Below, piece by piece: positions 42,952-63,902 of a DNA stretch of 64,000 bases (the first letter of the stretch is position 1; each line of letters begins with the position of its first letter). Position numbers and translations under genes: made by a program. The stretch is from positions 307,676 through 371,675 of IMG/VR virus record IMGVR_UViG_3300035212_003113. One strand, written 5' to 3'. The notes beneath the pieces are model-generated. The model was given only the letters and a program-made list of their open reading frames with translations, ran no database searches and was not told the DNA's origin.

Positions 42952-43201
42952 CCCTGAAATTTGCAAATTTTCCTAGCGTGCAATCCGCGTGCCACGCTAC
43001 CCCTCCGCCCCTATAACCCGCCAACCCCCGCCCAGGGGTTGCTTTCCTGTAAACGGCCAGGCAGCCGCCCGTAATAAAAGCGGCACAAATCTTGCCTATT
43101 ACTTTCCATTCCTTTCGGTCCTAAAGACATTCTTTCCTGATCCTGACGCGTGAGACAGGGACCCGTCCGTCAACCCCTTCCCCCTGTCTGTGAGGTAAGT
43201 C

Positions 43202-43612
43202 ATGACCACCACCATCACAGCCCGCGCCGCCTACGTTGCTACCGTAACCAAGACCGCGCTGGCGCTGGCCATCATGGCTCAAGAAGAATATCGCAAGGCG
43301 GTAGTGGAGGCGTTTGCCGCCTATGACGGCGGGCGCCCCGGCGCGGCGGCCGTCGCCGCCTTGCGGCGCGTGGCAGTCCGGCCCGCCACCGCCATTGAAA
43401 GCCGCCGCCCGGCGACGGAGACCGCCGCCCTTCTCGTGAACGCCTATGACGGCGGATACGACGCGGCGGAACGAGCCGCACGCCGTTGGGACATTGACGC
43501 CGTCGAGGGCGTCCCCTTCGCCGACCGGGTTGATGCCCGCCCATGGTTCCTTAATGTCATGCCTGATGGGACTGAGATGTGGCAGACGATTCCCGATGAC
43601 GTCGAGTTCTGA
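43202..43612 (+). CDS. cassette gene, Ala-rich hypothetical protein
   Basis: Preceded by element, leader L1 and GAGG; followed by hairpin and T-tract. Confidence 0.7.
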   Translation: MTTTITARAAYVATVTKTALALAIMAQEEYRKAVVEAFAAYDGGRPGAAAVAALRRVAVRPATAIESRRPATETAALLVNAYDGGYDAAERAARRWDIDAVEGVPFADRVDARPWFLNVMPDGTEMWQTIPDDVEF

Positions 43613-43771
43613 TGGCCGGGGCCGACCCTGCCCTGTCTGCCCCGGCTAGCCCGGGGCTTTTCTTTCACCGGGTTTCGAGCCGGGCCGGTCCTAAAAACAT
43701 TATCTTTTGATCCTGACGCGTGAGACAGGGATCAGTCCATCAACCCCTTCCCCCTGTCTGTGAGGTAAGTC

Positions 43772-44005
43772 ATGACCACCGCCGCCGTCACCACCGCCGC
43801 CCTCGCCGTCAACGCCCTCGCCGCCGCCCTCGATGCCGTCCGCGCCGCTCACGCCGCGTCACCGTCCTGCCCGGCGGCGGCCGCCGCGTTGGCGGTTACG
43901 GAGGCCGCGCTGGAACTCGCAAACCAAGGGCTCGACTCCGCCATCGGGGCGGATTCCATCGACTGGCGCCCGGGGCTTTGCGAGAGTCTCGTCGCCGGGG
44001 AATGA
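43772..44005 (+). CDS. cassette gene, Ala-rich hypothetical protein
   Basis: Preceded by element, leader L1 and GAGG. Confidence 0.7.
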   Translation: MTTAAVTTAALAVNALAAALDAVRAAHAASPSCPAAAAALAVTEAALELANQGLDSAIGADSIDWRPGLCESLVAGE

Positions 44006-44032
44006 CCCCGGCCTTCCCTCTCACCCTTCCGA

Positions 44033-44063
44033 CCCCGGCCACGCGCCGGGGTTTTTTTATTTT
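44033..44063 (+). terminator. intrinsic terminator, representative of cassette terminators
   Basis: CCCCGGC-CACGC-GCCGGGG plus T-tract; similar CCCCGGC..GCCGGGG+T hairpins near 44711, 45112, 48650, 49200. Confidence 0.8.
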
Positions 44064-44261
44064 CTGTCCGCCGTCGTCGCACGCCTATGTCACGGTCAAG
44101 GTCTAGGGCGGGGCGTCCCCGGCGCCAGCCCCGGCACGGGCCGGGGCTTTTCTTTTGCCCGGTCTCGAACCAGGCGAAATCCTAAAGACATTATCTTTTG
44201 ATCCTGTATGTCGAGACAGGGATCAGTCCATCAACCCCTTCCCCCTGTCTGTGAGGCCGTC

Positions 44262-44696
44262 ATGACCGCTTTCAATGACACGTTCCCCATCGTCGGCATG
44301 ACTGCCAAGTCCGTTGGACTCTGTAAGGACAAAGACGGCGGGGACGCCGTCCGATTCACGTTCGCGGACGGCAGCGAGTGGTTGATGCACCACTCGCGCA
44401 GCTGCTGCGAGTATGTTGGCCTCACGCAGGTCGACGGCGACCTGTGCGACCTTGTTAACTCCCCGCTCGTCATGGCGGAGTGCGCGGGCGAGATTGTCGA
44501 CGACATCGACGAGGACGGCCACTCGCTCGGAACAAGCGGTTGGACGTTCTACCGCTTCGCCACGGGGAAGGGCTACGTCACCCTGCGCTGGCAAGGCAAT
44601 AGCAACGGGTATTATTCAGTCGAGGTCTCTTTCTATCAGACGAAAGAGTCCGCGTCGATATCGTTCTATGATAACGACGACGACGACAACTACTAA
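44262..44696 (+). CDS. conserved phage hypothetical protein (CCE...WTFY...SNGYYS family)
   Basis: HHSRSCCEYV..VDGDLCDL, WTFYRFATGKGYVTLRWQGNSNGYYS; start re-called after GAGG. Confidence 0.75.
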   Translation: MTAFNDTFPIVGMTAKSVGLCKDKDGGDAVRFTFADGSEWLMHHSRSCCEYVGLTQVDGDLCDLVNSPLVMAECAGEIVDDIDEDGHSLGTSGWTFYRFATGKGYVTLRWQGNSNGYYSVEVSFYQTKESASISFYDNDDDDNY

Positions 44697-44828
44697 CCCG
44701 TAGTGAATCGCCCCGGCCCTGCCGGGGCTTTCGCTTTTCCGGGTTTCTTTCCCGGCCCCGGCCGGTCCTAAAGACATTATCTTTTGATCCTGATGCGCGG
44801 GACAATCCAGTCCCGTTTGGAGGCCGCC

Positions 44829-45089
44829 GTGACCATCCGCCGCACTGCTACCATCGTTGATGCCACCGCCGTCCGCACGGCGGTCATCGCCGCCCGTCTG
44901 CGGGCCGCCTACAGCGAGGCCGGTGACGCTGAGGCGGCCCGCATTCATCGGGGGCAGCTCGACGACGGTACGGTGGTGGTGGGGGTGCTTGACGCCCCTC
45001 CGCCCCCGCCGACGGAAGCGGAGTTGGTAGCGGAGCGCATCCGGGCGATGCGCGCCCGTATGGGTGGCGCGGCCCGCCCGCTCCGGTGA
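44829..45089 (+). CDS. cassette gene, hypothetical protein
   Basis: GTG start after GGAGG downstream of element 44764. Confidence 0.65.
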   Translation: MTIRRTATIVDATAVRTAVIAARLRAAYSEAGDAEAARIHRGQLDDGTVVVGVLDAPPPPPTEAELVAERIRAMRARMGGAARPLR

Positions 45090-45241
45090 ACCCGGCCCGC
45101 CGCTTCTCTCGCCCCGGCCCTGCCGGGGTTTTCTTTTGCCCGGTCTCGAGCCTGGCCCGTCCTAAAAACATTTCTTTTTGATCTTGTATGTCGAGACAGG
45201 GTCCAGTCCGTCAACCCCTTCCCCCTGTCTGTGAGGCAACC

Positions 45242-45604
45242 ATGAAGACCACCCGCGCCACCACCGCCGCCGTCAACGCCGCCATCGGGCGCGCCCACGC
45301 CCTCCTCTCCTTCGCCGCGCAAGCGGCTGAAGACGCCGACCTCGCCGCCACCACCGCCGCCGCCTACGGTGACGGCGGCGAAGCAGCCGCCTACGGAGCC
45401 GCCGCCGCCGCATGGGCGGCCAGCGGCGACGCCGCCGCCCGAAAGGGGGCAATCCTCGCCCCCCTCGTCGAGGGGGGGCGCATCACCCCCGCCCGCGCGG
45501 AGGAGGTGGTCAACGACCCCGCTTACTATCCCCTGGGGGACGAGGTCCTCCAAGACGAAGACGGAGTTTCCTACTCCGTCTGGGGGCACCCGGTTTACTG
45601 GTGA
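45242..45604 (+). CDS. cassette gene, Ala-rich hypothetical protein
   Basis: MKTTRATT after leader L1 and GAGG. Confidence 0.7.
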   Translation: MKTTRATTAAVNAAIGRAHALLSFAAQAAEDADLAATTAAAYGDGGEAAAYGAAAAAWAASGDAAARKGAILAPLVEGGRITPARAEEVVNDPAYYPLGDEVLQDEDGVSYSVWGHPVYW

Positions 45605-45742
45605 CCCCCGCCCCCCCGACCCCGCCCTAACCCGGCGGGGTTTCCGCTTTTCCGCTTTTCTTTCCCGGCCCCGGCCGGTCCTAAAAACATTTCTTTTTGA
45701 TCCTGTTAGATGTCAGAACAACCCGCAACACCCGGAGGCAGT

Positions 45743-45952
45743 ATGTCTAGCTATGACTGCATGTTTGAGCGCCTGAGCGCGGCTTCGGCCGCCGACAAGG
45801 CCGAGACCCCCACCGCCACCACTCCCGAGTGGCGCCTGCGGCCCACCCCGGGCCGGGACATCTGCTACTACTGCGGGACCGACAATGGCCCGCTTAGCGG
45901 GGAGTGCAGCTCCCGGCAAGGGCACGATTGCTATCACTGCGGCGGGAACTAA
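45743..45952 (+). CDS. cassette gene, small Zn-finger-like protein
   Basis: CYYCG...CSS...CYHCGG; GGAGG upstream. Confidence 0.65.
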   Translation: MSSYDCMFERLSAASAADKAETPTATTPEWRLRPTPGRDICYYCGTDNGPLSGECSSRQGHDCYHCGGN

Positions 45953-46092
45953 CTCCCGCCCATCGCCCCGCCCCGCCAGCAAGGCGGGGCCTTGCCGTTT
46001 TCTGCGTTTCTTTCCCGGCCCCGGCCGGTCCTAAAGACATTCTCTCTTGATCCTGTTAGGCGTCAGAACAACCCGCAACACCCGAGGCTCGC

Positions 46093-46425
46093 ATGGCGTT
46101 TGTGAACTTGACCCCCCACACCATCACCGTCGTCGACCAAGCGGGCGCGCCCGCGCTCGTCCTGCCCGCCGACGGGACCGTCGCCCGCGTGGCGACAAAG
46201 ACGGCCGTGGCCGCCGTCGTCGACGGCGTGGAGATTTTCGAAACCTCTTTCGGGGAGGTCGTCGGCCTCCCCGCGCCGGCCCCCGGCGTGACGTGGGTTG
46301 TCTCCGGCCTCGTCGCCGGACACCCGGCGGTGCGGGGCCGTACCGACGTCCTTTCCCCCGGGGCGCTTGTGCGCGGCCCCGATGGTCAGCCGGTTGGCTG
46401 CCGGGGCTTGAGCCGTCCCGCGTGA
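46093..46425 (+). CDS. conserved viral hypothetical protein (NLTPH family)
   Basis: NLTPHTIT...ARV...GLPAP...VVSGLVA...RTDVLSPG..VR..DG...GCRGL. Confidence 0.75.
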   Translation: MAFVNLTPHTITVVDQAGAPALVLPADGTVARVATKTAVAAVVDGVEIFETSFGEVVGLPAPAPGVTWVVSGLVAGHPAVRGRTDVLSPGALVRGPDGQPVGCRGLSRPA

Positions 46426-46539
46426 GCGGCTCCCCGGTCAATCGACCGGGCTGCCCGGCTCGTCACCCGTCCTAAAAACATTATCTTTTGATCCTGTTAG
46501 ACAGAAGCCGGAACGAAACAAACCGGCACGGAGGATACG

Positions 46540-47007
46540 ATGAAGACCCTGACGATTATGCGTGGCGTCCCCGGTAGCGGCAAGAGCACCCTTGCCAAGG
46601 TGCTCGCCAACGTCCCGGGCGTCGAGACGGCTCCCGTGTTTTCCACAGATGATTTTTTCATGGTCGATGGCGAGTACCGCTTCGACGGGTCGAAGCTCGG
46701 GGCCCACCACGCGGCCAACCTCCGCCGCACGGCGGAGGCGATGGAAGCCGGTGTTACCCACGTCATCGTGGACAACACTATGACTCAAGGATGGGAGGCG
46801 CGGGAATATGTCCGCGCCGCGACCTTCCACGGATACAGGGTGCAGTTCGTCGAGCCGCGCACGCCGTGGGGGCGGGACGCGGCGGAGTGCGCCGCCCGTA
46901 ACTCTCACGGGGTTCCCCTCGCCGCAATCGAGGGGATGCTGGCCCGGTGGGAGCCGGACCTCACCCCGGAAGCGTGCTTGAACGCCCGCGCCCCGTGGGA
47001 GGGGTGA
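46540..47007 (+). CDS. P-loop kinase, AAA_33/N4BP2-like
   Basis: MRGVPGSGKST, FSTDDFF, VIVDNT, HGVP...IEGML. Confidence 0.85.
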   Translation: MKTLTIMRGVPGSGKSTLAKVLANVPGVETAPVFSTDDFFMVDGEYRFDGSKLGAHHAANLRRTAEAMEAGVTHVIVDNTMTQGWEAREYVRAATFHGYRVQFVEPRTPWGRDAAECAARNSHGVPLAAIEGMLARWEPDLTPEACLNARAPWEG

Positions 47008-47110
47008 GAGATGCCCGGCGCCGGCCGGGCTCTTTCCCCGGCCGGTCCTAAAAACAGAAAGTTTTGATCCTGATAGGCAGAGCGGCAAACAACACGCCGC
47101 AGGAGGCAAC

Positions 47111-47425
47111 ATGCGTACCGAAACGACCCTCTCTGTTCGCATTGGAATCGTAAATGCCATGGCCCGCCGGGCCGGGGACGCGGGCCTGGCTGCCCGTGCA
47201 GATCAGGTCACGGATCTCGCCTTTGCCTTGCTCGCCATCGGCGGCGACGCCGGGCCGGTGGTGGAGGCACTGGCCAACCTCGCCGGAGAGTTGGAAACGG
47301 CGATGGTACGCCGTGGCTTCAACCGCCGCGAGATTCCGGCGGTTATCCGCCGGGACTGCGAAGCTGCCGGGCTGCCGGTGGCCGATGCCACGGTCACGGT
47401 CCGCAAGCCGGGGGTGGGGCTGTGA
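47111..47425 (+). CDS. cassette gene, hypothetical protein
   Basis: AGGAGG upstream; follows element 47044. Confidence 0.7.
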   Translation: MRTETTLSVRIGIVNAMARRAGDAGLAARADQVTDLAFALLAIGGDAGPVVEALANLAGELETAMVRRGFNRREIPAVIRRDCEAAGLPVADATVTVRKPGVGL

Positions 47426-47568
47426 AGCCGTGGAACATCCCTGACGACGAAACCGATAACCGCCCCGCCCGCATGGGCCGGGGCCGCCCGGCGGGTGAGT
47501 CGCCCCGCCCGACAAAGGGTCGTCCCCGCTCGTGGGATGCCCGCCGAAGGGAAAAGCGCCGCGACTAG
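47422..47568 (+). CDS. small Arg/Pro-rich peptide
   Basis: GTG overlapping the upstream stop; MKPWNIPDDETDN...WDARRREKRRD. Confidence 0.45.
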   Translation: MKPWNIPDDETDNRPARMGRGRPAGESPRPTKGRPRSWDARRREKRRD

Positions 47569-47650
47569 CGGACCGGGGGAGCAATCCCCCGCCCGCCTTC
47601 CGCCGGTCCTAAAAACATTCTTTTTTGATCTTGATAGGCAAGAGGTGAGT

Positions 47651-47749
47651 ATGACCCGCCGCGATGCTGCCGATGCGTTTTTCTTCCTTGCCGGTATGTT
47701 TGTTCTCGTGTTCGTCTATCCCGTCTTGTTCTACGGGATGGCGGGTTAG
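47651..47749 (+). CDS. 32-aa membrane peptide
   Basis: GAGGTG SD; MTRRDAADAFFFLAGMFVLVFVYPVLFYGMAG; has its own element (47605). Confidence 0.6.
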   Translation: MTRRDAADAFFFLAGMFVLVFVYPVLFYGMAG

Positions 47750-47825
47750 TCTCCGGGGCCGGTGCCCCCTTTCTCGCCGGTCCTAAAAACATTCTTTCCT
47801 GATCCTGTTAGTCACGGAGGCAGCG

Positions 47826-48038
47826 ATGAAAGACAAGGCTGGCAAGATGACGGTGACCTTTCCCGACGGCAGCAAGCTGACGGCCATGGCTCCGATGGGG
47901 CTCCCCGGTACGCTGGCCACGGTCGGATGGGAGGCCCACCGCGCCCGGGCGGCGATAGCCGAGATGGACATGACAAGTATTCAAAGGCTCCTGCGCCACT
48001 CCGATGCGCTGCGGGCGCTCCGGCAAGCGGGCTACTGA
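47826..48038 (+). CDS. cassette gene, hypothetical protein
   Basis: GGAGG SD after element 47779. Confidence 0.7.
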   Translation: MKDKAGKMTVTFPDGSKLTAMAPMGLPGTLATVGWEAHRARAAIAEMDMTSIQRLLRHSDALRALRQAGY

Positions 48039-48126
48039 TAAGGAATCGGGCCGGGGCTTGTCCCCGGTGCCGAGCCGGACCGGTCCTAAAAACATTCTTT
48101 TCTGATCCTAATAGGCGGAGGTCAGC

Positions 48127-48291
48127 ATGGCTCAATCGGTTCGGATTCGCATCGCTGGAAACTTCGGGCACGCGCTTTGCCTGTGCCCGGGGTGTTGTCC
48201 CCGTGGCGGCGGGGGCAAGGCGGCCGTCAAGCGCAAGACGGCGCGGGCCGTCCGGCGTTCCGAGCGCCGGGAGATCGAGACGGAGGATTAG
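48127..48291 (+). CDS. 54-aa Cys/basic peptide, missed by the ORF track
   Basis: GGAGG at 48117; MAQSVRIRIAGNFGHALCLCPGCCPRGGGGKAAVKRKTARAVRRSERREIETED. Confidence 0.65.
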   Translation: MAQSVRIRIAGNFGHALCLCPGCCPRGGGGKAAVKRKTARAVRRSERREIETED

Positions 48292-48370
48292 CCGTCCCGG
48301 CCCGGGGAGTCGCATCCCCGGTCCCGAACCTGCCCGGTCCTAAAAACATTATCTTTTGATCTTGATAAGC

Positions 48371-48628
48371 ATGAACAACAACGACAGCCTCACTGCCCGA
48401 TCCAACATCGTCGCGCTCCGGCGCGCCGACCGCGATGCGGCTGCCGCGCGCCGCGCGGGCTACGGAACTGACCGCGCCGCTTGGTGCGGCGTCGATGCCG
48501 GCCTTGCCAAGCTCATGACGGAGGCGGGCCTTTTCGCCCGCCTGCCCGCTGAGGCCCGCGAGCAGTGGGACGCCGGTTGTCTTTCCGCGTCGGAAGCTTT
48601 CGCTATCATCGGCGACGAACTATTTTAG
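48371..48628 (+). CDS. cassette gene, probably leaderless
   Basis: ATG falls exactly on the inferred +1 of element 48336; no SD. Confidence 0.65.
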   Translation: MNNNDSLTARSNIVALRRADRDAAAARRAGYGTDRAAWCGVDAGLAKLMTEAGLFARLPAEAREQWDAGCLSASEAFAIIGDELF

Positions 48629-48772
48629 TTCGCCGCCCACCCTTCCACCGCCCCGGCCCCGCCGGGGCTTTTCTTTTGCCAGGTCTCGAACCTGGCAGCG
48701 GTCCTAAAAACAGATATTTCTGATCCTGTTAGACATCGGAACGGCGGCACGGGCCGCACAACGGAGGATAGC

Positions 48773-49183
48773 ATGGCTTCGCAAAAGCGCTCTCTCGCCC
48801 TTGACATTCGTCTCGCTGGCATCGATTTCCCGTCGGACGTGGGCCGGGCGTTGGAGTTCTACGTTAACGGCAAGCTCCTGTTTCGTGGGGACCGTGCGGG
48901 ATTCGAGCGGCTCTGGGCCGCTCTCCCAAATATCCATGCCGCTTTCGGCGGGATGGAGTCTGAAGGCGTGCGCCCCTTCCGCACGGGGACCGTGCGCTTT
49001 CAGCCGGGCCGCAACCCGCAAGTCGGATACGTCTACACGTTGGAGGACGTGGCCGCCTGCATGCTGTTCCGTCATGAAGTCGAGGAAGCTCTTGACGGGC
49101 GCGGGGCGTTCCTGCCGGACGACGTGCTCGAAGATACTCACTCCTGCGCAGGGTGGGGATGTGTTTGTCACAGTGAGAGCTAG
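48773..49183 (+). CDS. cassette gene, hypothetical protein
   Basis: GGAGG SD after element 48700. Confidence 0.7.
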   Translation: MASQKRSLALDIRLAGIDFPSDVGRALEFYVNGKLLFRGDRAGFERLWAALPNIHAAFGGMESEGVRPFRTGTVRFQPGRNPQVGYVYTLEDVAACMLFRHEVEEALDGRGAFLPDDVLEDTHSCAGWGCVCHSES

Positions 49184-49339
49184 CCTCACAGCGGGCCTCG
49201 CCCGGCCCCGGCCTAATCAGCCGGGGTTTTTTTGTCTTTTTTTGCGGGCGTCATCGGTCCTAAAAACATAACTTTTTGATCCTGATAGGTGTCCAGCGGT
49301 TCCCGGCGCTCCTGCCGGCCCGCCCTGCCCGAGGTTAGC

Positions 49340-49648
49340 ATGACCAACGTCATCGGCATTATTCTCTCTACCGACTACGGCACCCTCGAAATCGAGGGGG
49401 TGGAGGCCGGCGCTCTTGCCCGCCTGCGCCGTGACCCGGTACTGGTCGCGGCCGTGGAGGCGGCCGACGACGACGCCTTTGCGGCTCGTCTCATCGACCT
49501 CCACCCGGAAGTGGCGGACTATGAGGTCCCGTCAACCGACTTCCTGCGGGTGACGCGCCTGCCCGCCGGCACCCGGTACGGGATTGTCATGGGCGACGGG
49601 GATACCGAAGCGCTCGTCTCGGAGCTTGACCTTACCGAGACGGCATGA
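49340..49648 (+). CDS. cassette gene, hypothetical protein
   Basis: GAGGT SD; MTNVIGIIL. Confidence 0.65.
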   Translation: MTNVIGIILSTDYGTLEIEGVEAGALARLRRDPVLVAAVEAADDDAFAARLIDLHPEVADYEVPSTDFLRVTRLPAGTRYGIVMGDGDTEALVSELDLTETA

Positions 49649-49743
49649 CCGTCCGGGCGGGGGCCGGGTTCACCCGGCTCCGCCCCTCTCCTCCCCGGTC
49701 CTAAAAACAGATTCTTTTGATCCTGTTAGACATGGAGGCCACG

Positions 49744-51219: not shown

Positions 51220-51320
51220 CCGTCCGGGGCGGGTCGGGGGAGAAATCCCCCGGCCTTTCCTTCCGGCCCCGGTCCTAAAGACATACTTACCTGATCCTGA
51301 TAAGCACAACGGAGGCCGGT

Positions 51321-56776: not shown

Positions 56777-56891
56777 GGGACGACCGACGAACCGCCGCAG
56801 CATACAGGATGCGGTGGATCTAACAGTAGCGCCGGTCCTAAAGCCGGTGTCCCCCGATCCTGTAGGACGAACCGCAAACCCCGGAGACGCC

Positions 56892-57200: not shown

Positions 57201-57219
57201 AGCCCTGACAGGAGACAAC

Positions 57220-57714
57220 ATGCATAAGTCTTTTTCGGAAATGCTTGGCGCTAACTTCAAGCCGGCTGACTTTGCTCCCGGTCGCTATGACATGATGGTA
57301 GACTATTTCTCTTGGACCCTGCATGTTGCCAATGCTATTTCTGAGGCCGTTGCTAATCATGTTCGGGAAAGCCGCCCGGATGCCATGCCGGACCTGAATG
57401 ACCCGGCTGTTATTGTTCGCACTCTGTATAGCTTTTTCAATGGGCGTATTACTGAGAATGACGGGCTAGAGCTTGTCCTGATTCCCGAAGGTCAGCCGTC
57501 TGATCACTGGGATATTATTCCCGGCAAAAAGTATAGCGTCAACTACGCTTACTTGCACAATGCCTGCGCTATTATGCTCGGTGTTCCTACCTATGTCAAG
57601 CAGGATGATGCTGGTCTTATTCGCAACTTTTGGTTTGTCGAGGAATACTTTTTCCGTGATGCCGAAGGCCTTGAGCGTTGGCTAAAGATCCGGGCTGCCC
57701 GCCGGGCTGCCTGA
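57220..57714 (+). CDS. hypothetical protein
   Basis: AGGAG SD; stop overlaps the left end of element 57713. Confidence 0.65.
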   Translation: MHKSFSEMLGANFKPADFAPGRYDMMVDYFSWTLHVANAISEAVANHVRESRPDAMPDLNDPAVIVRTLYSFFNGRITENDGLELVLIPEGQPSDHWDIIPGKKYSVNYAYLHNACAIMLGVPTYVKQDDAGLIRNFWFVEEYFFRDAEGLERWLKIRAARRAA

Positions 57715-57764
57715 TCCTAAAGACGGTTTATCCCGATCCTGTAACCTGTAACCCCGGAGATCCT

Positions 57765-58226
57765 GTGCCTAACTGGTGTGGTAACATTGTCGAGATTTCT
57801 TCCAACAGCACCGCTGACATGGATGGGGTCATGGCCCTACTCTGCAATACCGACGAGCCATTCGCTGCTATCTTTCCCCGTCCGCCTGACGAGGATTGGT
57901 ATGATTGGAATACTACCAACTGGGGCACCAAGTGGGATGCCACCGGCTTCTCTATTAGCCGGGATTCTGATGATCACATTACTCTGACCTTTGACACAGC
58001 TTGGGCTCCGTCACTTGGCGTCACCGGCCGGCTGGCAGATCGCTTTCCCAGCCTGGAGATCCGCCATCTCTATGAGGAGCCTGGTATGTGTTTCAATGGC
58101 TGTGCTACTTTTGCCAAAGGACGCATGACTGGCGATGAATGCCGGGACATGACTGATAATGATCTGGAGATAAACGAGGACGGGGAAGAAAATCCCGACT
58201 TTGTTTACCTGTCTGATCGCTTCTAG
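57765..58226 (+). CDS. YubB/Api92 (DUF1281-like) family protein
   Basis: MPNWC..N, WYDWNTTNWGTKWDA, FDTAWAP, LYEEPG. Confidence 0.8.
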   Translation: MPNWCGNIVEISSNSTADMDGVMALLCNTDEPFAAIFPRPPDEDWYDWNTTNWGTKWDATGFSISRDSDDHITLTFDTAWAPSLGVTGRLADRFPSLEIRHLYEEPGMCFNGCATFAKGRMTGDECRDMTDNDLEINEDGEENPDFVYLSDRF

Positions 58227-58571
58227 GAATGACATGAGCAAGCCTATTGTTCATGCCGGACGAGCATTGGCACTTAGTCCGGCACAGGCAGATGCCGCCA
58301 TTAGTGGATAGCTAAAGGTGGCACTTGCCTACCGGCAAGGTCGTAAGCGCCGCATTCGTAAAGGACTATTGCGGGTTTATGGTTGCCCTTGCTGTGGTAT
58401 ATTTGCAGATGTCATCGGCGTCAACACGCAGCGCCGCTATGTCAACTTCACAAATCTTTTCTCCCTCTTTCGTGATCGACTGATACCAGCCCATGACTGA
58501 GGGGGCCGGGCCTAAAGCCGGTGCCGCCCGATCCTGTAGGTCGACCGCCACACCCCAACAACGGAGTCAGT

Positions 58572-59177
58572 ATGACCGAGCGTATCCCGCAGATTGGTGA
58601 GACTATCCGCAATCGTACCGGTGGCAATCTGAGCGCCAGCTTTGCTGCCATGCAGAATCTGCGTGCTGTCATCGAGGAGATTACTGAGGCTGCCCGTGTG
58701 CAGGCTATCCTCCAACAGCACCTGGATGGCAAGGTGTCGGCTCTGGCCGTCCGCTATGATGACATTGTTGAATGTCCAGAAATCCTGAACTTTGTTACGC
58801 CGATTAGCCGCGAGCCGGACTTTGACGGCAAGTTTATCCTCTGGGAAGGCTACGCCCGTGATGCCGGCAATCCTATGAGTGGTATGCGTGGTGACCGTGG
58901 CCAGCTCCACCGGGTTATCCAGCACGCCAACGGCCACCGTGTTTTCTGCAAGTACAACAGCGTGTTGCAGAGCTGGAATACTTGCGAGGCCCGTGACCCT
59001 GAAACTGGCAATAAGATTCCCAATCGTTTTCCCAAGGCTGTGTTCCGCCGCCGCAAGAGCGATGACTGGGCGGACGTTGGCGCTGACACGGTTAGCCGGA
59101 CTGTTATGAGCCCCAAGGGTGATACCACTACCCGTGTCTTTGACGCCAACTGGAAGCCACGTTCGGTTCGTCGCTGA
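58572..59177 (+). CDS. cassette gene, hypothetical protein
   Basis: GGAG SD after element 58508. Confidence 0.7.
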   Translation: MTERIPQIGETIRNRTGGNLSASFAAMQNLRAVIEEITEAARVQAILQQHLDGKVSALAVRYDDIVECPEILNFVTPISREPDFDGKFILWEGYARDAGNPMSGMRGDRGQLHRVIQHANGHRVFCKYNSVLQSWNTCEARDPETGNKIPNRFPKAVFRRRKSDDWADVGADTVSRTVMSPKGDTTTRVFDANWKPRSVRR

Positions 59178-59257
59178 CAAGTAATCGGTTGCTGCCGACG
59201 GACAGCAAGTGGTTTGCACGTTCCGCAAAAAAACGTGCGCTTTTTACCGGGAGAGCT

Positions 59258-59422
59258 ATGAGCGAATACAACGATTACCCTTATTGTGGAACCTGCTTGC
59301 GCTATCTGCACGAGCCTCCCGAGTATTCCTTTTGTCTGGCACTATTCAAGATGTCGGTTTGCCGGGAGTGTGGCAAGCAGCAGGTGCCGGAAGATAGGCA
59401 GTCTCATAAGGATAATCCATGA
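59258..59422 (+). CDS. small Zn-finger-like protein
   Basis: CGTC...CRECG. Confidence 0.55.
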   Translation: MSEYNDYPYCGTCLRYLHEPPEYSFCLALFKMSVCRECGKQQVPEDRQSHKDNP

Positions 59423-59634
59423 CCGCTGCTGATGACCGTCTGACAAGCATTGTCGAGGAGCGGGATGCTGCCCATTTCGAGGCGAAACTTCTGCGCGAAG
59501 ATAATGAACGCCTGCGAACGGCACTAAAGCGGTTGATGGATGCTGCCCCTTTAGAGGACAACGGCAGCACACAACTTGTCGACGCTTTTATTCACGCCCT
59601 AAATACTCTTGACCGAACCAGAGATGAGCCATGA
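59419..59634 (+). CDS. small coiled-coil protein
   Basis: EERDAA...DNERLR; ATGA overlaps. Confidence 0.6.
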   Translation: MTAADDRLTSIVEERDAAHFEAKLLREDNERLRTALKRLMDAAPLEDNGSTQLVDAFIHALNTLDRTRDEP

Positions 59635-60011
59635 AGATTGATGATTTCCTAGAGGCCGACGAGAATGGCTGGCACATTGACTGGTACACGCTGCACGCCA
59701 ATGAAGCGGATGTTATCTACGCAAAGGAAGAACACGGGAAAGATATTCAGGCTGGAGATGTGCTATGGCGCTTGCCTAAAGCGATTGGTCCTATTGACAT
59801 TGACTACAATGGCTGGACCGGCTATTATCTCAAGTGCAGGGAGAGTGATGCCCTACTCGCTGCTGCCGCTCCCGATCTGCTAGCCGCCTGTGAACTACTG
59901 CTAAAGGCACAAAGCTGTGCAGACGCAGGCGAGGGAGATGGCTTTGGGTATTATGTCGATGCTGTTCAAGCAGCAGGCATCGCTATTGCCAAAGCAAAGG
60001 GCAAGTCATAA
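59631..60011 (+). CDS. hypothetical protein with AAAPDLL motif
   Basis: LLAAAAPDLLAACE...AIAKAKG. Confidence 0.65.
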   Translation: MKIDDFLEADENGWHIDWYTLHANEADVIYAKEEHGKDIQAGDVLWRLPKAIGPIDIDYNGWTGYYLKCRESDALLAAAAPDLLAACELLLKAQSCADAGEGDGFGYYVDAVQAAGIAIAKAKGKS

Positions 60012-60035
60012 TGATCCGAGCGAAAGAAGAAAATC

Positions 60036-60392
60036 ATGAATGATTTACTCGACGAGATCAAAGAAAAGTGGAACATACCATACACGCTGCCTATGTCTGT
60101 TCCATGGGGAAAAGACGACGTTGTATGGCTGGTGCAAGAGATCGAACGCCTGCGCGCCGAGAGCGAACGTCTTCTGAGAGAACGGGCCACGGCGTGGTTT
60201 GAGCGCGACGAAGCCCGCTATGGGCTGTTGGAAATGCACCGTGAGCGCAACGAAGCACGAGATGATAACGAGCGCTTGCGTGAAGTGATTCAATCCCTAG
60301 TAGAACAAAAAAAGATTGTCAATATCCGTGAGGCCGATGGCACATACATTGACGTGACAGCTTGGTGCAAGGCTGCTCTTGAACAGGAGTGA
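60036..60392 (+). CDS. coiled-coil (Ead/Ea22-like) hypothetical protein
   Basis: DVVWLVQEIERLRAE, ERDEAR/ERNEAR heptads. Confidence 0.6.
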   Translation: MNDLLDEIKEKWNIPYTLPMSVPWGKDDVVWLVQEIERLRAESERLLRERATAWFERDEARYGLLEMHRERNEARDDNERLREVIQSLVEQKKIVNIREADGTYIDVTAWCKAALEQE

Positions 60393-60478
60393 CAGCCCGC
60401 CCCGGTCCTAAAGCCGGGGACCGCCGATCCTGAGCGGCGAGCCACCGACAGCCGGTGAGTTTTTTGTCCGGGAGACAC

Positions 60479-60685
60479 ATGATCTTTGACAGACTCGATG
60501 AGTACGAAGGCGGTGGTGGTTTCGACGGAACCTACTGCCCGGAATACTACAATCGAAAGCCAACGCGAGAGCCTGGCTACAGCGTACAAGTATTCGACCG
60601 ATACGCCGACGAAGATGCAGTCCTCCAAAAAAATAAATCAAAACCATCGCCATTGGCAATGCTGTGGCTCAAGGAGCAACCATGA
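60479..60685 (+). CDS. cassette gene, hypothetical protein
   Basis: GGGAG SD after element 60404. Confidence 0.55.
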   Translation: MIFDRLDEYEGGGGFDGTYCPEYYNRKPTREPGYSVQVFDRYADEDAVLQKNKSKPSPLAMLWLKEQP

Positions 60686-61251
60686 GCAAACCACTGACCG
60701 ACAACGCTATCCGCCTACCCGCCGACCTCGCTGGCGCTCTTGCACTCATCGAAAGCCTCACCGTCCAGCGTGACGCAGCGGAGGCGTTGGCGAAGGAGCG
60801 GACGATTGAGCGCGACAACTACGGACAGGAACTCGACAAGTCGACTGGCATGGTCGAGATGCTCGTCGACGACGCCGAAGCAGCCCGCATGTTGTGGCGC
60901 TCGTCAGAGAAGGCGTGCGCGCACATGGATACCCAGCGTGCCATCGCCCGCGCCGAGCGTGACGACGCCGAGCAGATGGTGGCGCAGTTGCGGGAGACGT
61001 TGACGACTGGTCGAGACATCGTCATCGAAACCAGCCGCCAACACACTCAGTGGGTCGAGGGTGCCTACGATATCCTTGAATCCTCCGCCCCCATCGCCGG
61101 TCGGTGGTGTCTGGCGAGCGAACATGCCGCTGCTATCGCACGTCTTGAGTTCTTGGAACGCAAGGTCAGACGGGCGGAGGAGGTCATGGACGTGATCCGG
61201 TCTAGTTTACCCCTGCTGGTGCAGCACTATGAAGAAGAGGTGAAGTCATGA
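60682..61251 (+). CDS. coiled-coil hypothetical protein
   Basis: AGGAG SD; QRDAAE/ERDNY/ERDDAE repeats. Confidence 0.65.
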   Translation: MSKPLTDNAIRLPADLAGALALIESLTVQRDAAEALAKERTIERDNYGQELDKSTGMVEMLVDDAEAARMLWRSSEKACAHMDTQRAIARAERDDAEQMVAQLRETLTTGRDIVIETSRQHTQWVEGAYDILESSAPIAGRWCLASEHAAAIARLEFLERKVRRAEEVMDVIRSSLPLLVQHYEEEVKS

Positions 61252-61460
61252 GCCCGCTTGTTGCCGCTGTTGTCTCGCTGGCGCTGCCGGTCATTGCTGC
61301 CGACGCCTTACTTGCTGTACTGTGCTTCGCCCTTGGGGGTGAGGCCAAGCGGTGGGCGGTTATCTGGTGGGCGCGGTTATTTTACCCCGCGATTACTTGT
61401 GCATTCGCCCTCGTGTCCCTTGGTATTTACCATATGCTGGTGCAAGGGGTGAAACCATGA
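61248..61460 (+). CDS. small membrane protein
   Basis: Two hydrophobic segments; GAGGTG SD. Confidence 0.6.
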   Translation: MSPLVAAVVSLALPVIAADALLAVLCFALGGEAKRWAVIWWARLFYPAITCAFALVSLGIYHMLVQGVKP

Positions 61461-61533
61461 TGACGAATCACACACCGGGACCGAAGGGGTGCATCATGAA
61501 TCTGCCTGACCCCGGCGACGACAAGGAGACGGC

Positions 61534-61845
61534 ATGACCACAAAATACACACCCGGACCGTGGGACTGGCGAGACACATCCGATTTGCGTCAGGCGAAAT
61601 CAACGAGGACCGACGGGAGGTACGGCGAATCTGTGCTCTGTGCGTCCTATGATTATGATCGTGGACCGTACCTGGATACGACGGATGCCAACCGAGCCCT
61701 GATCGGTGCAGCGCCTGACCTGCTGGCGGCGCTGGTTCATCTGGAGCGTATGGTATCTAAAATGCGCCAAACATTAGACGACGACGACCCGGCGCTAGAG
61801 TCAGCCCGCGCCGCCATCGCAAAGGCGACGAAGGAGCAGTCATGA
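61534..61845 (+). CDS. TPGPW...ANxxLIxAAPDLL family hypothetical protein
   Basis: YTPGPWDW; ANRALIGAAPDLL. Confidence 0.7.
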   Translation: MTTKYTPGPWDWRDTSDLRQAKSTRTDGRYGESVLCASYDYDRGPYLDTTDANRALIGAAPDLLAALVHLERMVSKMRQTLDDDDPALESARAAIAKATKEQS

Positions 61846-61899
61846 ACACCAACAGCGCGACCTCGCGCCTCTACGGGCTGGACGGGTACCGGAGAAACC

Positions 61900-62178
61900 A
61901 TGACAATGAAACGTGACCGGGCGGCAGCCGCTGCCTTTTTCCACGACCAGCCCGAGTGGGATCTCACCATTGCCCACTGGATTGAGACGGGCGAAAAACG
62001 CTACGGCGCGGGCACCGTGCGCTCCAACGTGCTGGCGCTGGCAGAAGCCTTCGCGGCTCACTCCGTCCCCGTCGACAACTCCAGCAGCAGCCATGCGACT
62101 CACAAGCGCGAGCGCGAGGAGTTGAAAGCGTCGACCGACAAGATTTTTGCTGATTTAGACAAGGTGGTGAAACCATGA
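61900..62178 (+). CDS. hypothetical protein
   Basis: GGAG SD. Confidence 0.55.
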   Translation: MTMKRDRAAAAAFFHDQPEWDLTIAHWIETGEKRYGAGTVRSNVLALAEAFAAHSVPVDNSSSSHATHKREREELKASTDKIFADLDKVVKP

Positions 62179-62369
62179 GTAAAGACGAAGCACTTGTTCT
62201 GATGACTATTCGCTGTTTGGAGGCCGAAGCACGCCTACAACAGGCCGTGCCGCTTGACGCCGTTCAACGGCTCCGAGAGGAAGTATTGTCACGGGCACCC
62301 GAGAGCCTGCGGGGTGGTTATGACCGGTTCTTTGCAGAGGTAGTAGGCAAGCCCTGTAGGCCGTTGTGA
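62175..62369 (+). CDS. hypothetical protein
   Basis: ATGA overlap. Confidence 0.55.
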   Translation: MSKDEALVLMTIRCLEAEARLQQAVPLDAVQRLREEVLSRAPESLRGGYDRFFAEVVGKPCRPL

Positions 62370-62506
62370 CGGCAGCACTCAGCTGCGTATTGTGCGGACG
62401 CCCCGGCCCTAAAGACGGAGTCCCCCGATCTTGAAGGCCGAAGCGCCCCGCCTAAATGGCAAACTGTTCCTGCCTGCCTCTACAGAGTTCTAAAAGGATA
62501 AAAGCC

Positions 62507-62899
62507 ATGAAGATTCTAAATCGTGAAAACTTCCTGCGCTGTCCTGCTGGCACGGTATTCTTTGACTATAAGCCGCAAGTCTTTGGAGGTCTTTCTATCA
62601 AGACATGCGAGCCAAAGCCACTCAATAGGAATAACGGATATCCGGACGATTTCTTCCGCATTGATATTGACACGGTGCTCAATGTAGGGGAACCCGGTCG
62701 TGGTGAGTCATGCAGCGATACCTATGAAGCTATTTCTCTCCTGGAACGCGCGGAGGCTGGCGAGCAGGTAGACCTGCATTTTGATGCCGATGGACGCGAC
62801 GGCATCTTTGACGAGGATGCCCGCTTTGCCGTTCTCGATCCCGAGGATGTGCAACGCTTGATTGCTGTACTCAGTAATGCGCCCAAGGAAATGCCTTGA
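62507..62899 (+). CDS. cassette gene, hypothetical protein
   Basis: MKILNRENFLRCPAGTVF; AAGGA SD after element 62405. Confidence 0.65.
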   Translation: MKILNRENFLRCPAGTVFFDYKPQVFGGLSIKTCEPKPLNRNNGYPDDFFRIDIDTVLNVGEPGRGESCSDTYEAISLLERAEAGEQVDLHFDADGRDGIFDEDARFAVLDPEDVQRLIAVLSNAPKEMP

Positions 62900-62960
62900 T
62901 CCGTACAACGGCTGACATTATCTAGAGAGGCAACTTTCTCTAAGAATTTTGGAGCAAAGC

Positions 62961-63335
62961 ATGAGCAAGCACACACCTGGACCATGGGCTGCCGGCCGAG
63001 CTGATATGCAGACCATTGTAGAAGGTTATCCCTGCAAATGGATCTATGGTCCAGACGATTCTTATTTGGCCTTGGCAAGCGGCCGTGCATCCGATAACTG
63101 GGATGAAGTTATGGCCAATGCCCGGCTAATCGCAGCCGCTCCAGCACTACTTGCATTTGCCGAGCGCGTACTAGCCCGCTGGCATTCCCATGACGGCCAG
63201 CTAGATCGCATTGATGATGCGCTCGCTGCGCTTGCAGCAGCTACCGGCAAAGAATCAGAAGATATTCTCCGTCAATCAGAAAGTGCTGTACGGCAAATGC
63301 TGAAGGAACTGTATGGAGAAGATACAGAGGAATAA
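62961..63335 (+). CDS. TPGPW...ANARLIAAAP family hypothetical protein
   Basis: HTPGPW; ANARLIAAAPALL. Confidence 0.7.
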   Translation: MSKHTPGPWAAGRADMQTIVEGYPCKWIYGPDDSYLALASGRASDNWDEVMANARLIAAAPALLAFAERVLARWHSHDGQLDRIDDALAALAAATGKESEDILRQSESAVRQMLKELYGEDTEE

Positions 63336-63427
63336 GACTTCCTGACAGTCCCCGCCGGCCCTAAAGCCGGCGTCCCCCGATCCTGAAGGCCGAACCCCGC
63401 CGCAAACCTTCTAACGCTGGAGATAAA

Positions 63428-63748
63428 ATGGGCACCCGTTTTGTACCGATGGCTGATGTAAAGTCCGCTTCTCTCGCTGCCGGCTCCCATTGGTTTGAGC
63501 CAGATTCTATGCGATTCTTCCGCACCCGCTTGCCCCTGCTTGGTAAGATGGATGACGGCGGCAGAGTATGGTTCGTCAGCTCTGAGGCACCCCGCAGCGG
63601 AAACCGCAAGTATTCTGTTCGGGTATTTATTCCACAGACCGGCTCTGTACAAACTCACGGAACTTTTCACTCGTACGCTTCCTCTCGTGCTGCACAGCGG
63701 GCTGTCGATACTGCGATTGCAGCTGGTATTGGTCCGCAGTCAGCATAG
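63428..63748 (+). CDS. conserved phage hypothetical protein (HWF...MRFF family)
   Basis: HWFEPDSMRFFRTRL...FVSSE...YSVR; GGAG SD after element 63357. Confidence 0.7.
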   Translation: MGTRFVPMADVKSASLAAGSHWFEPDSMRFFRTRLPLLGKMDDGGRVWFVSSEAPRSGNRKYSVRVFIPQTGSVQTHGTFHSYASSRAAQRAVDTAIAAGIGPQSA

Positions 63749-63902
63749 CAGAAAGGGCCGCCCTAAAGCCGGTGTCCCCTGATCTTGTAGGTGGAGCCTG
63801 CTGACTGCATCAGTCCCGTCAAAAGAATTTATTATTTCTTACCAGGACAATCATCCACAGTGACGTTGTGTCCCATTAGACTGCCTTTGCACGGAGGACA
63901 AA

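What the first reader, a model, noticed from the sequence alone, without database searches (positions are those of the whole stretch)
43117..63787. 21-kb array of single-gene cassettes built on a 29-bp bipartite element with exact -35/-10 geometry and a non-sigma70 consensus
Seen: 47 copies of GGTCCTAAA-N13-GATC(C/T)TG with invariant spacing. The usual layout is stop, GC hairpin plus T-tract, element, short leader, GGAGG, ATG. In 38 copies the base 35 nt after the element start is a purine, preceded by a pyrimidine in 37. Four unrelated shared leader sequences each begin on that base while the 7 nt before it vary (GAGACAGGG at 43152/43722/44213/45193; GTCAGAACA at 45712/46062; AGAAGCCGG at 46503/52143; AGAACGGCGGC at 50089/54780). 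One ATG (48371) lies on it. This puts GGTCCTAAA at -35..-27 and GATCCTG at -13..-7. No full copy was found by eye in nt 1-43100. Established: this is sigma-factor promoter geometry with a YR initiator, and promoter-dense early regions occur in SPO1 and T4-type phages. Inference: a dedicated promoter class read by a phage-encoded or host alternative sigma/RNAP that is not encoded in this window. I do not recognise the consensus.
Basis: partly seen in the sequence, partly recalled or inferred. Interest (0 to 1): 0.92.

Follow-up and report, generated by a model that had tools for sequence, protein, structure and literature searches.

The report
Jumbo-phage promoter class, 70+ copies
A 38-bp two-box DNA signal, present 47 times in this window and at least 27 more times elsewhere in a 372-kb uncultivated phage genome, is very probably the phage's own early/middle promoter, placed with a terminator between small swappable genes; its consensus fits no sigma factor or phage polymerase I compared it with, so what reads it is unknown.

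Summary
There are 31 exact and 47 near-exact copies with invariant N13 spacing, against none expected by chance and none in nt 1-43100. The window is the last 64 kb of a 371.7-kb jumbo myovirus contig.

- **Size and extent.** The conserved unit is longer than reported, running from -37 to +1. It is not confined to 21 kb. A GC-rich-spacer form (class B) continues on the same strand for about 145 kb in total.
- **Class A.** The AT-rich-spacer form is restricted to a 65% GC block at 43.1-54 kb. That block holds 25 terminator-promoter-gene modules.
- **Start site.** Three observations place the start at element position 36. Ribosome-binding sites begin at +1 to +4 and never earlier. One ATG lies exactly on +1. 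In orthologous modules of a related phage, homology starts at about +1.
- **Relatives.** Related phages keep GGNCCTAAA-N13-GATCC with the same spacing, while cassette order is shuffled. This resembles the PeSL promoter-terminator modules of T4-like phages.
- **Consensus.** It is not sigma-70-like and not the AT-rich jumbo-phage vRNAP type. Both boxes resemble sigma-28 boxes but lie 5 bp too close together.
- **Reader enzyme.** About two thirds of the genome was sampled. It holds no RNA polymerase subunit and no complete sigma factor, only a clade-specific zinc-ribbon protein with a sigma region-4 domain.

Verdict: a real promoter class with a new consensus and an unidentified reader.

The parts
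43117..53357 (+). Class A block: 25 elements with an AT-rich spacer (AACAK then T-rich). Element starts are 43117, 43687, 44178, 44764, 45158, 45677, 46027, 46468, 47044, 47605, 47779, 48082, 48336, 48700, 49256, 49697, 50054, 50752, 51271, 51751, 52108, 52510, 52894, 53183, 53329. Each is followed by a short leader and a small ORF of 32-170 aa. One unit is bicistronic (51321-51716) and one is doubtful (53183).
   Evidence: GC 0.65 and GC3 0.77
43639..53935 (+). Inter-cassette GC-rich hairpins, one or more per gap. They end 10-46 nt before the next element, and 14 of 24 are followed by a T-rich tail (intrinsic-terminator-like).
53979..56025 (.). Promoter cluster with few ORFs. It holds + strand copies at 53979, 54087, 54256, 54397, 54537, 54745 and a stack of six at 55659-55997 spaced 59-81 bp. 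Several of these lack the YR start.
54188..54216 (-). Inverted copy, convergent with the + copy at 54087. The predicted starts are about 59 nt apart across an ACAACCGGGGGCGGG motif.
54500..54528 (-). Degenerate inverted copy (3 mismatches), convergent with the + copy at 54397.
56747..63787 (+). Class B elements with a GC-rich spacer (GCCGG then N8 then C), at 56747, 56834, 57713, 58508, 60404, 62405, 63357, 63759. They stand in front of multi-gene units, and the series continues beyond the window.
48371..48628 (+). ORF whose ATG lies exactly on predicted +1 (a leaderless message if the start assignment is right). The public gene call uses the same ATG.
46540..47425 (+). Two cassettes (an AAA_33 kinase-like ORF and a 104-aa ORF) with orthologues of 88% and 84% identity in the related phage L135. 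DNA homology starts at the ATG or within the -10 box and stops at the stop codon.
50827..51219 (+). Class A cassette encoding a small winged-helix-like protein. All Pfam hits are below threshold. It is a candidate regulator.
50089..50192 (+). Structured 104-nt leader of a three-member paralogue family. Sister leaders lie at 53364-53452 and 54780-54868.
42470..43060 (.). Repeat-rich, probably non-coding junction at the divergence point just left of the first element.
41091..42467 (-). Divergently oriented 458-aa gene that marks the left border of the promoter-bearing block. Its homologues were used to find the same layout in relatives.

Best explanation
**What it is.** The element is the core promoter of the early (or early plus middle) transcription programme of an uncultivated 372-kb jumbo myovirus.

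**Anatomy, from the sequence.**
- An upstream box CC-GGNCCTAAAR lies at about -37 to -26.
- A fixed 12-nt gap follows.
- The downstream box is Y-GATCYT-G. Its hexamer GATCCT has the A at position 2 and the T at position 6 of a sigma-70-family -10 element.
- A 7-nt discriminator follows, then a pyrimidine-purine start at element position 36.

**Genome layout.** The promoter heads about 72 transcription units on one strand over roughly 145 kb. At the start of that block (43.1-54 kb of the window) it is fused to a preceding hairpin terminator. Together they form insulated single-gene modules. These are strongly expressed and are reshuffled between related phages, as PeSL modules are in T4-like phages.

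**Inferred, not shown.** The enzyme is a bacterial-type multisubunit RNA polymerase, most likely the host core. A specificity factor other than the primary sigma guides it. I lean towards a phage-supplied factor. A clade-specific 191-aa zinc-ribbon plus sigma-region-4 protein, encoded 22 kb into the block, is the only candidate seen. The AT-rich (class A) and GC-rich (class B) spacers probably set strength or timing.
For: **Copies and conservation.** Copy number and invariant spacing are far beyond chance. Conservation is strand-specific: 71 of 72 catalogued copies, and 72 of the 74 in this genome, are on the coding strand, each upstream of an ORF.

**Start site.**
- A GC hairpin precedes every class A copy.
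- SD sequences begin at +1 to +4 in six cassettes here and at +1 in two cassettes of L135, and never earlier. One ATG lies on +1.
- Leader hairpins begin 1-7 nt after position 36.
- YR at positions 35/36 occurs in 27/30 class A, 34/42 class B, 12/13 L135 and 11/11 other relatives.
- In orthologous cassettes, homology begins at about +1 or the -10 box while the spacers differ completely.

**Relatives and distribution.**
- The boxes and the N13 spacing are kept in at least four related contigs.
- The class is absent from the structural and replication parts of the genome.
- Cassette order differs between the two phages.

**Candidate factor.** It passes the Pfam Sigma70_r4 threshold. It is 79% conserved in a relative that has the same box. 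It is found only in this clade.
Against: There are no transcript data, so the start site is inferred. The cognate factor is unknown.

**Weaknesses of the sigma-4-like candidate.**
- It lies inside the block it would have to activate, so it would need to be injected or made from another promoter.
- Its fold matches to sigma factors are all non-significant (best E 0.45).
- One source names it a CsgD-family regulator.

**Other limits.**
- About one third of the genome was not read and could hold a polymerase.
- Ten of 24 class A hairpins lack a T tract.
- Copies were collected by matching the core, so conservation of the core is partly ascertainment.
- All copies of this phage from different samples are identical in the region compared, so there is no population-level variation to test.
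Confidence: 0.6

Rival explanations
1. The promoter is read by a phage-encoded RNA polymerase, as in phiKZ/AR9-type or N4-type phages. It would be either packaged in the virion or made early, and its genes would lie in the unread third of the genome.
For: The consensus is unlike the primary-sigma type and carries far more information (about 48 bits summed) than a 372-kb genome needs. That is typical of promoters for dedicated phage polymerases. No complete sigma was found. Several very large virion-module proteins have no recognisable domains.
Against: **No polymerase genes seen.** The roughly two thirds read has no DFDGD catalytic motif and no Pfam RNAP domain.

**Promoter form.** Known jumbo-phage vRNAP early promoters are a single AT-rich motif of about 10 nt near -10, without an upstream box (PMC7598289). 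T7-type promoters are contiguous and short.

**Gene content.** The phage has a UvsW-type helicase, and its tubulin is similar to that of phage G. In the jumbo-phage groups defined in PMC7824862, phages with such features lack polymerases of their own.
Confidence: 0.2
2. The promoter is read by an unaided host alternative sigma, for instance a sigma-28/FliA-like factor in a flagellated host. The phage would simply borrow a host regulon signal.
For: The upstream box CCTAAAG and the downstream CGAT(CC) resemble the sigma-28 boxes TCTAAAG and GCCGATAA. The A of GAT falls at -12 or -11, as in sigma-28 promoters (PMC12784957).
Against: The gap between the two boxes is 11 nt here and 16 nt in the sigma-28 promoter read. 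That is half a helical turn of difference, and the gap here never varies. A scan of 185,579 species genomes with the class B consensus found no genome with more than one copy. That pattern did include phage-specific spacer bases, so the test is weak.
Confidence: 0.12
3. The element is not primarily a promoter. It could be a recombination site for cassette exchange, an operator for a DNA-binding protein, or an RNA processing signal that produces the 5' ends at position 36.
For: Cassette order differs between relatives, with breakpoints at or near the elements. The two boxes share GNNCCT as a direct repeat 22 bp apart. Class B copies have an imperfect inverted repeat around TAAA. Copies without downstream genes exist at 55659-56025.
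Against: **Against a recombination site.** Neither of the two divergent ORFs next to the array shows a recombinase domain. There is no attC-like structure.

**Against processing.** The terminators in front of each copy make read-through processing unnecessary. Class A has no RNA hairpin.

**For a promoter role.** Strand bias, the fixed distance to the SD boundary and the YR start are promoter properties.

**Compatibility.** Recombination at repeated promoters is a known by-product in PeSL modules, not an alternative function (PMC4122927).
Confidence: 0.06

Closest known systems
PeSL (promoter-early stem-loop) modules of T4-like myoviruses (PMC2839356, PMC4122927)
   Same: A composite terminator hairpin plus early promoter is repeated between small, mostly unknown-function genes in a hyperplastic region. 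Related phages differ by cassette gain, loss and reordering at these repeats.
   Different: The PeSL promoter is a host sigma-70 early promoter, whereas this consensus is not sigma-70-like. Here the same promoter class also heads ordinary operons for a further 130 kb or so. The recombination intermediates reported for PeSLs (recalled from the first PeSL paper, which I did not read here) were not and cannot be tested.
Sigma-28 (FliA) promoters, TCTAAAG at -36..-30 and GCCGATAA at -15..-8 (PMC12784957)
   Same: Both boxes are similar in sequence (CTAAAG; CGAT). The A of GAT lies at about -11/-12. The spacer is GC-rich in class B.
   Different: The boxes are 11 nt apart instead of 16. GGNCC upstream of TAAA is as conserved as TAAA itself. 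The downstream box ends in CCTG rather than AA.
T4 middle promoters (MotA box centred at -30 with sigma appropriation; from my own knowledge, with context in PMC2988021, which I did not read)
   Same: A box of about 10 bp occupies -35 to -26 in place of a canonical -35 hexamer. It is combined with a -10 hexamer of the nAnnnT form. A small phage DNA-binding protein would supply the upstream contact.
   Different: The T4 -10 is a good sigma-70 TAnnnT, whereas here it is GATCCT. No MotA or AsiA homologue was seen. The candidate factor here has a sigma region-4 fold family, not a MotA fold.
Early promoters of RNAP-encoding jumbo phages (phiKZ, AR9; PMC7598289)
   Same: A highly conserved motif is repeated upstream of early operons of a jumbo phage. 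It is predictable from sequence alone.
   Different: Those are single AT-rich motifs of about 10 nt centred near -10. This one is bipartite, reaches -37 and is GC-containing. No vRNAP genes were found in the two thirds of the genome read.
SPO1 host-takeover module and the T4 early region (from my own knowledge)
   Same: Many strong promoters and terminators are packed around small genes at the start of the infection programme.
   Different: Those use the host primary sigma. Nothing is known here about timing.

Membership tests
Primary-sigma (sigma-70 type) promoter | TTGACA-like hexamer, 16-18 bp spacer, TATAAT-like hexamer | tested here: not met
   None of the 15 sigma-70-like sites in 43-63 kb coincides with an element. 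The hexamer at the -10 position is GATCCT, which keeps A2 and T6 only. GGNCC sits at the -35 position. The alternative register, with TAGRCN as the -10, is excluded because SDs start at element positions 36-39.
Sigma-28 / FliA promoter | TAAAG-type -35 box and GCCGATAA-type -10 box | tested here: inconclusive
   CCTAAAG and CGATCC resemble the boxes quoted in PMC12784957. This is a comparison by eye, with no scoring model.
Sigma-28 / FliA promoter | Spacing of the two boxes (16 nt between TAAAG and CGAT in the promoter read) | tested here: not met
   The gap is 11 nt in all 72 copies and in all relatives.
Jumbo-phage virion-RNAP early promoter | Single AT-rich motif of about 10 nt centred near -10, with no upstream box | tested here: not met
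   The element is bipartite from -37 to -7. The family is described in PMC7598289.
Jumbo-phage virion-RNAP early promoter | Genome encodes split beta/beta' RNAP subunits | tested here: inconclusive
   The roughly 64% of the contig read has no DFDGD motif and no Pfam RNAP hit. About 110 kb plus four gaps remain unread.
T7-type single-subunit RNAP promoter | One contiguous conserved block from about -17 to +6 | tested here: not met
   Conservation is split into two boxes, reaches -37, and is weak from -5 to +6.
N4 virion-RNAP promoter | Short hairpin in the promoter DNA | tested here: not met
   Class A copies have no inverted repeat. Class B copies have only an imperfect one without consistent covariation.
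PeSL module (T4-like phages) | Terminator stem-loop directly followed by an early promoter, repeated between variable small genes | tested here: met
   All 24 class A gaps have a GC hairpin ending 10-46 nt before the element. The genes are small and mostly without known families.
PeSL module (T4-like phages) | Indels and reordering between related phages at the repeats | tested here: met
   In the L135-to-window comparison, orthologous ORFs keep 82-83% DNA identity with sharp ends, while neighbours differ and the order is changed.
PeSL module (T4-like phages) | The promoter is a host sigma-70 early promoter | tested here: not met
Integron cassette array | Tyrosine recombinase next to the array, and attC inverted-repeat sites at cassette ends | tested here: not met
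   The divergent neighbour genes have no recombinase domain. The element is not palindromic.

The most novel reading that the evidence does not exclude
A clade of uncultivated jumbo phages runs its whole early programme through a specificity system of its own. The host core polymerase would be redirected by a phage-supplied, possibly injected, minimal sigma-like factor: the zinc-ribbon plus region-4 protein, alone or with an unrecognised partner. That factor would read a 10-bp box at -35 to -26, set half a helical turn closer to the -10 element than in any sigma-70-family promoter I compared it with. The class A and class B spacers would act as a built-in timing code.
Probability: 0.2. Interest if true: 0.8.

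Novelty: new variant of a known kind. Interest (0 to 1): 0.55.

Why it matters
**Transcription map.** The promoter map gives the transcription architecture of an uncultivated jumbo-phage clade from sequence alone. It marks about 145 kb of one-strand units, their predicted starts, and a hyperplastic cassette block that is probably the host-takeover region.

**An open mechanism.** This clade shows no polymerase and no complete sigma in the two thirds read, yet its promoter is too specific for a primary sigma. That makes the means of redirecting transcription a defined question, with a concrete DNA probe (a 40-bp element) and one concrete protein candidate.

**Generality of PeSL-type shuffling.** The comparison with a relative extends terminator-promoter module shuffling beyond T4-like phages and beyond sigma-70 promoters.

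Tried and rejected
- **DNA similarity to known phages.** Nothing useful was found. tblastn with the tubulin gave only a distant hit to Bacillus phage G, and the 944-aa protein gave nothing.
- **tRNA and Rfam scans of the window.** Both were empty.
- **Metagenome pattern scan.** It returned only single chance-like matches.
- **Literature search for the box sequence.** It returned only unrelated primers and miRNA sequences.
- **Sigma-70 register.** I considered AAGACA as the -35, a 17-bp spacer and TGnTAGACA as an extended -10. I rejected it because SDs and one ATG start at element positions 36-39, and because five copies have no TAGRC.
- **A second promoter motif in nt 1-43100.** The repeat search found none.
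- **GATC avoidance or Dam-related logic.** GATC is not depleted in the rest of the window, so I did not pursue it.
- **Large proteins without domains.** Proteins of 653, 944, 458, 1529, 1579, 1177, over 1857 and 2397 aa were compared with PDB sequences, looking for N4-, crAss- or phiKZ-type polymerases. There were no significant hits.
- **A sigma-2-like partner next to the sigma-4-like gene.** None was found.
- **Sigma-70-like promoters upstream of that gene.** Their number is no higher than chance.
- **Failed or unhelpful look-ups.** One look-up failed because I guessed a TTG start. The most divergent homologue of the border gene sits on contigs that break before the array.
- **Sample and assembly accessions in the literature.** No paper mentions them.

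Full report

Yes. The pattern GGTCCTAAA-N13-GATCYTG has 31 exact matches in the window, against 0.00 expected from shuffles. It has 46 matches at up to two mismatches, against 0.07 expected, and 47 at up to three.

Forty-five copies are on the + strand. Two are on the - strand, at 54188 and 54500. The 13-nt gap never varies. Nothing comparable occurs in nt 1-43100.

- CC precedes the element.
- Positions 1-14 read GGTCCTAAARACRK.
- Position 22 is T or C.
- Positions 23-30 read GATCYTGW.
- Positions 31-35 tend to TAGRC.
- Position 36 is a purine in 38 copies, and position 35 is a pyrimidine in 39.

Summed over positions -2 to 36, conservation is about 48 bits. This is uncorrected and partly inflated, because copies were chosen by their core. 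About 13 bits would be enough to specify some 72 sites in a 372-kb genome.

**2. Where the window comes from**

Pattern and protein look-ups place the window at the last 64 kb of IMGVR_UViG_3300035212_003113, a 371,675-bp contig. The same contig was assembled independently from other samples as 371,689 and 371,645 bp. Two of these copies, over 20.3 kb, are identical to each other and to the window where they overlap it.

Gene content of the window and flanks:
- The left 43 kb (GC 0.49) encodes a TubZ-like tubulin, UvsW-type and DnaB-type helicases, PhoH, ribonucleotide reductase, an amidase and a 2397-aa collagen-repeat fibre.
- Further left lie baseplate and tail genes.

It is therefore a jumbo myovirus. 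It has no near relative among deposited phages.

**3. Anatomy of the array**

From 43117 to 53357 there are 25 copies whose spacer is AT-rich (class A). Each is followed, 0-104 nt after position 36, by a Shine-Dalgarno sequence and an ORF of 32-170 aa with GC3 of 0.59-0.90.

Every gap between a stop codon and the next element contains a GC-rich hairpin with a 5-11 bp stem. Fourteen of the 24 have a T-rich tail.

This block has GC 0.65 and mean GC3 0.77. The left part of the window has GC 0.49 and mean GC3 0.50. The block's proteins are Ala-rich. They are mutually unrelated apart from one three-member family, and they are almost all without known families.

From 53979 to 56025 the copies crowd together with few ORFs. 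This stretch includes two convergent + / - pairs and a stack of six copies 59-81 bp apart.

From 54397 onward the spacer is GC-rich (class B; GCCGG after the TAAA, a run of C before GATC). These copies head multi-gene units.

**4. The class extends far beyond the reported 21 kb**

Two further class B copies lie just past the window end. Scans of IMG/VR with class B patterns retrieved many more from the same contig.

In all I catalogued 30 class A and 42 class B copies. Seventy-one are on the same strand. They lie every 1-6 kb, up to contig position about 123 kb.

The contig is evidently a circular permutation. The series therefore runs from window position 43.1 kb, across the contig end, for about 145 kb.

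At about 142.5 kb the + strand block meets minus-strand tail-fibre genes. The broader pattern found no copy between 124 and 307 kb. That pattern requires CC and G in the spacer and missed two variant copies inside the block, so spacer variants there are not excluded.

Genes in the class B region are accessory and DNA-metabolism functions. They include a MoxR-type ATPase, a VWA protein, an M16 peptidase, a trigger-factor-like protein, type II topoisomerase subunits, ligase, Lon and GroEL.

**5. Evidence that it is a promoter starting at position 36**

- **(a) Left boundary.** In six window cassettes the SD begins at +1 to +4 relative to position 36. One ATG (48371, also the public gene call) lies on position 36. 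No SD or start codon lies further upstream. In the relative L135, two cassettes have GGAGG starting exactly at position 36.
- **(b) Leader hairpins.** In 13 cassettes a stable leader hairpin starts 1-7 nt after position 36.
- **(c) YR start.** YR at positions 35/36 holds in 27/30 class A, 34/42 class B, 12/13 L135 and 11/11 other relatives.
- **(d) Terminators.** Terminator-like hairpins precede the copies.
- **(e) Orientation.** Strand and position relative to ORFs are consistent over 72 copies.

The boundary in (a) also rules out the register I considered in which TAGRCN would be a -10 hexamer. That register would start transcripts behind their ribosome-binding sites.

**6. Relatives**

Homologues of the divergent border gene (41091-42467) led to a phage about 73% identical in that protein (L135). 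It has the same divergent layout. It carries 13 copies of GGSCCTAAAGCCGGTG-N5-ACGATCCYC with the same N13 spacing.

Four cassettes are orthologous, at 88, 84, 55 and 49% protein identity. DNA identity of 82-83% covers exactly the ORF in one case. In another it runs from the -10 box to the stop codon. The promoter spacers are entirely different, and the neighbouring cassettes and their order differ.

Three other viral contigs carry class B copies. So does a 2.9-kb contig binned with a Geobacteraceae MAG.

What the clade conserves is GGNCCTAAA, the N13 gap, GATCC and the YR start. The AT-rich class A spacer is a peculiarity of this phage.

**7. What reads it**

Geometry is sigma-like. GGNCC occupies -35 to -31. 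The hexamer GATCCT occupies the -10 position, with the A and T that sigma-70-family region 2 captures. A 7-nt discriminator follows.

It is not primary-sigma-like.

Both boxes resemble sigma-28 boxes (TCTAAAG and GCCGATAA; PMC12784957), but they are 11 nt apart rather than 16. That fails the spacing criterion.

It is unlike the single AT-rich -10 motif of vRNAP early promoters in RNAP-encoding jumbo phages (PMC7598289).

I read about 64% of the genome. In it I found:
- no Pfam RNAP or Sigma70_r2 domain;
- no DFDGD motif;
- no significant hit to E. coli FliA, RpoE, RpoD or RpoS, singly or as a profile.

The one exception is a 191-aa protein at contig position about 22.5 kb (L145:7770-8345).
- It has an N-terminal zinc ribbon and a Sigma70_r4 domain (27.4 bits against a cut-off of 24.1).
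- It is 79% conserved in a relative that carries class B promoters.
- It is confined to this clade.
- Its predicted structure (pLDDT 78) lists sigma factors and isolated region-4 domains among the top fold matches, but none is significant.

A class A cassette (50827-51219) encodes a small winged-helix-like protein, with hits below threshold. These two are candidates, not findings.

PMC7824862 describes a jumbo-phage group defined by a UvsW-type helicase. That group lacks a polymerase of its own and uses phage sigma factors. This fits a host-core model, but it is only an analogy.

**8. Comparison with known systems**

In architecture the class A block matches the PeSL modules of T4-like phages (PMC2839356, PMC4122927). 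Both have a terminator stem-loop fused to an early promoter, repeated between variable small genes, with shuffling between relatives. It fails only the criterion that the promoter be of the sigma-70 type.

In function it also resembles the SPO1 host-takeover module and the T4 early region (my own knowledge).

An upstream box at -35 to -26 combined with a -10 hexamer recalls T4 middle promoters, which work by sigma appropriation (my own knowledge).

I therefore file it as a new variant of a known kind. It is a phage promoter-terminator module system with a new two-box consensus, an unusual box spacing and an unidentified reader.

**9. Confidence**

| Claim | Confidence |
|---|---|
| The element is a promoter with its start at position 35-37 | about 0.85 |
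| The enzyme is a bacterial-type polymerase guided by a non-primary specificity factor | about 0.6 |
| That factor is phage-supplied | about 0.35 |
| A phage polymerase is hidden in the unread third | about 0.2 |

None of this rests on transcript data.

Noticed in passing
window 42470-43060: The junction left of the first promoter is repeat-rich. It has 80-bp units, 10-bp phased GGAGAT-type repeats, four copies of the palindrome CTGCACGTAGTGCAG, and C-rich CCGCCCCCGCCC motifs. The ORFs called here (42497-43024, 42567-42995) are probably not genes, because the repeat spacings of 90 and 80 bp are not in one frame. It could be an origin, a packaging site or a regulatory region.
   Followed up: partly
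window 54025-55628: The motif ACAACCGGGGGCGGG occurs four times just downstream of promoter copies. Two occurrences lie between convergent + / - promoter pairs whose predicted starts are about 60 nt apart. Its reverse complement resembles the C-rich motif in the left junction, so the class A block is flanked by inversely oriented G/C-run motifs.
   Followed up: partly
window 55659-56025: Six promoter copies are stacked 59-81 bp apart, with no ORF or terminator between them. Several have T rather than a purine at position 36. They may act as a polymerase sink, a source of short RNAs or a very strong compound promoter.
   Followed up: no
window 50089-50192, 53364-53452, 54780-54868: Three paralogous genes (65-79% identity) have long, strongly folding leaders of 89-104 nt (-29 to -39 kcal/mol). 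They share a hairpin whose stem differs between copies around a loop GTGGT/ATGGT. This is a possible cis-regulatory RNA.
   Followed up: partly
window 43000-54000 versus the rest: The class A block has GC 0.65 and GC3 0.77, and its proteins are 17% Ala. It sits inside a genome of GC about 0.49-0.52. The relative's array is also GC-rich (0.61 over the 15.4-kb locus). Adaptation of the earliest genes to a high-GC host, or a foreign origin, would both fit.
   Followed up: partly
L145:7770-8345 (contig about 22.5 kb, outside the window): A 191-aa protein with a zinc ribbon and a sigma-70 region-4 domain. It is restricted to this phage clade. One source annotates it as a CsgD-family regulator.
   Followed up: yes
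window 10182-11528: A tubulin/TubZ-like gene. Its only match in the phage collection is a 25%-identity hit to Bacillus phage G.
   Followed up: partly
window 33844-41037: A 2397-aa fibre protein with a collagen-like Gly-X-Y stretch (9-bp period at 38965-39072) and four internal repeats of about 708 bp (35722-38715).
   Followed up: no
window 57412-57599, - strand: Three good sigma-70-like promoter matches (11, 10 and 9 of 12) lie within 190 bp. They are antisense inside a + strand ORF of lower GC. This is probably chance, but it is the densest such cluster in the region.
   Followed up: no
window 56236-56285: A decayed look-alike of the element (GGCTCTAAAGCCGG, then no GATC box) lies directly upstream of the ATG at 56283.
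   Followed up: no
window 50-399: Three tandem copies of a 102-bp unit (73-82% identity) lie inside the first ORF region of the window.
   Followed up: no
L154 and L176: A 2.9-kb contig binned in a Geobacteraceae MAG carries a perfect class B promoter. A 171.6-kb piece of this same phage sits in GenBank assembly GCA_043533855.1. These are weak hints for host assignment.
   Followed up: no
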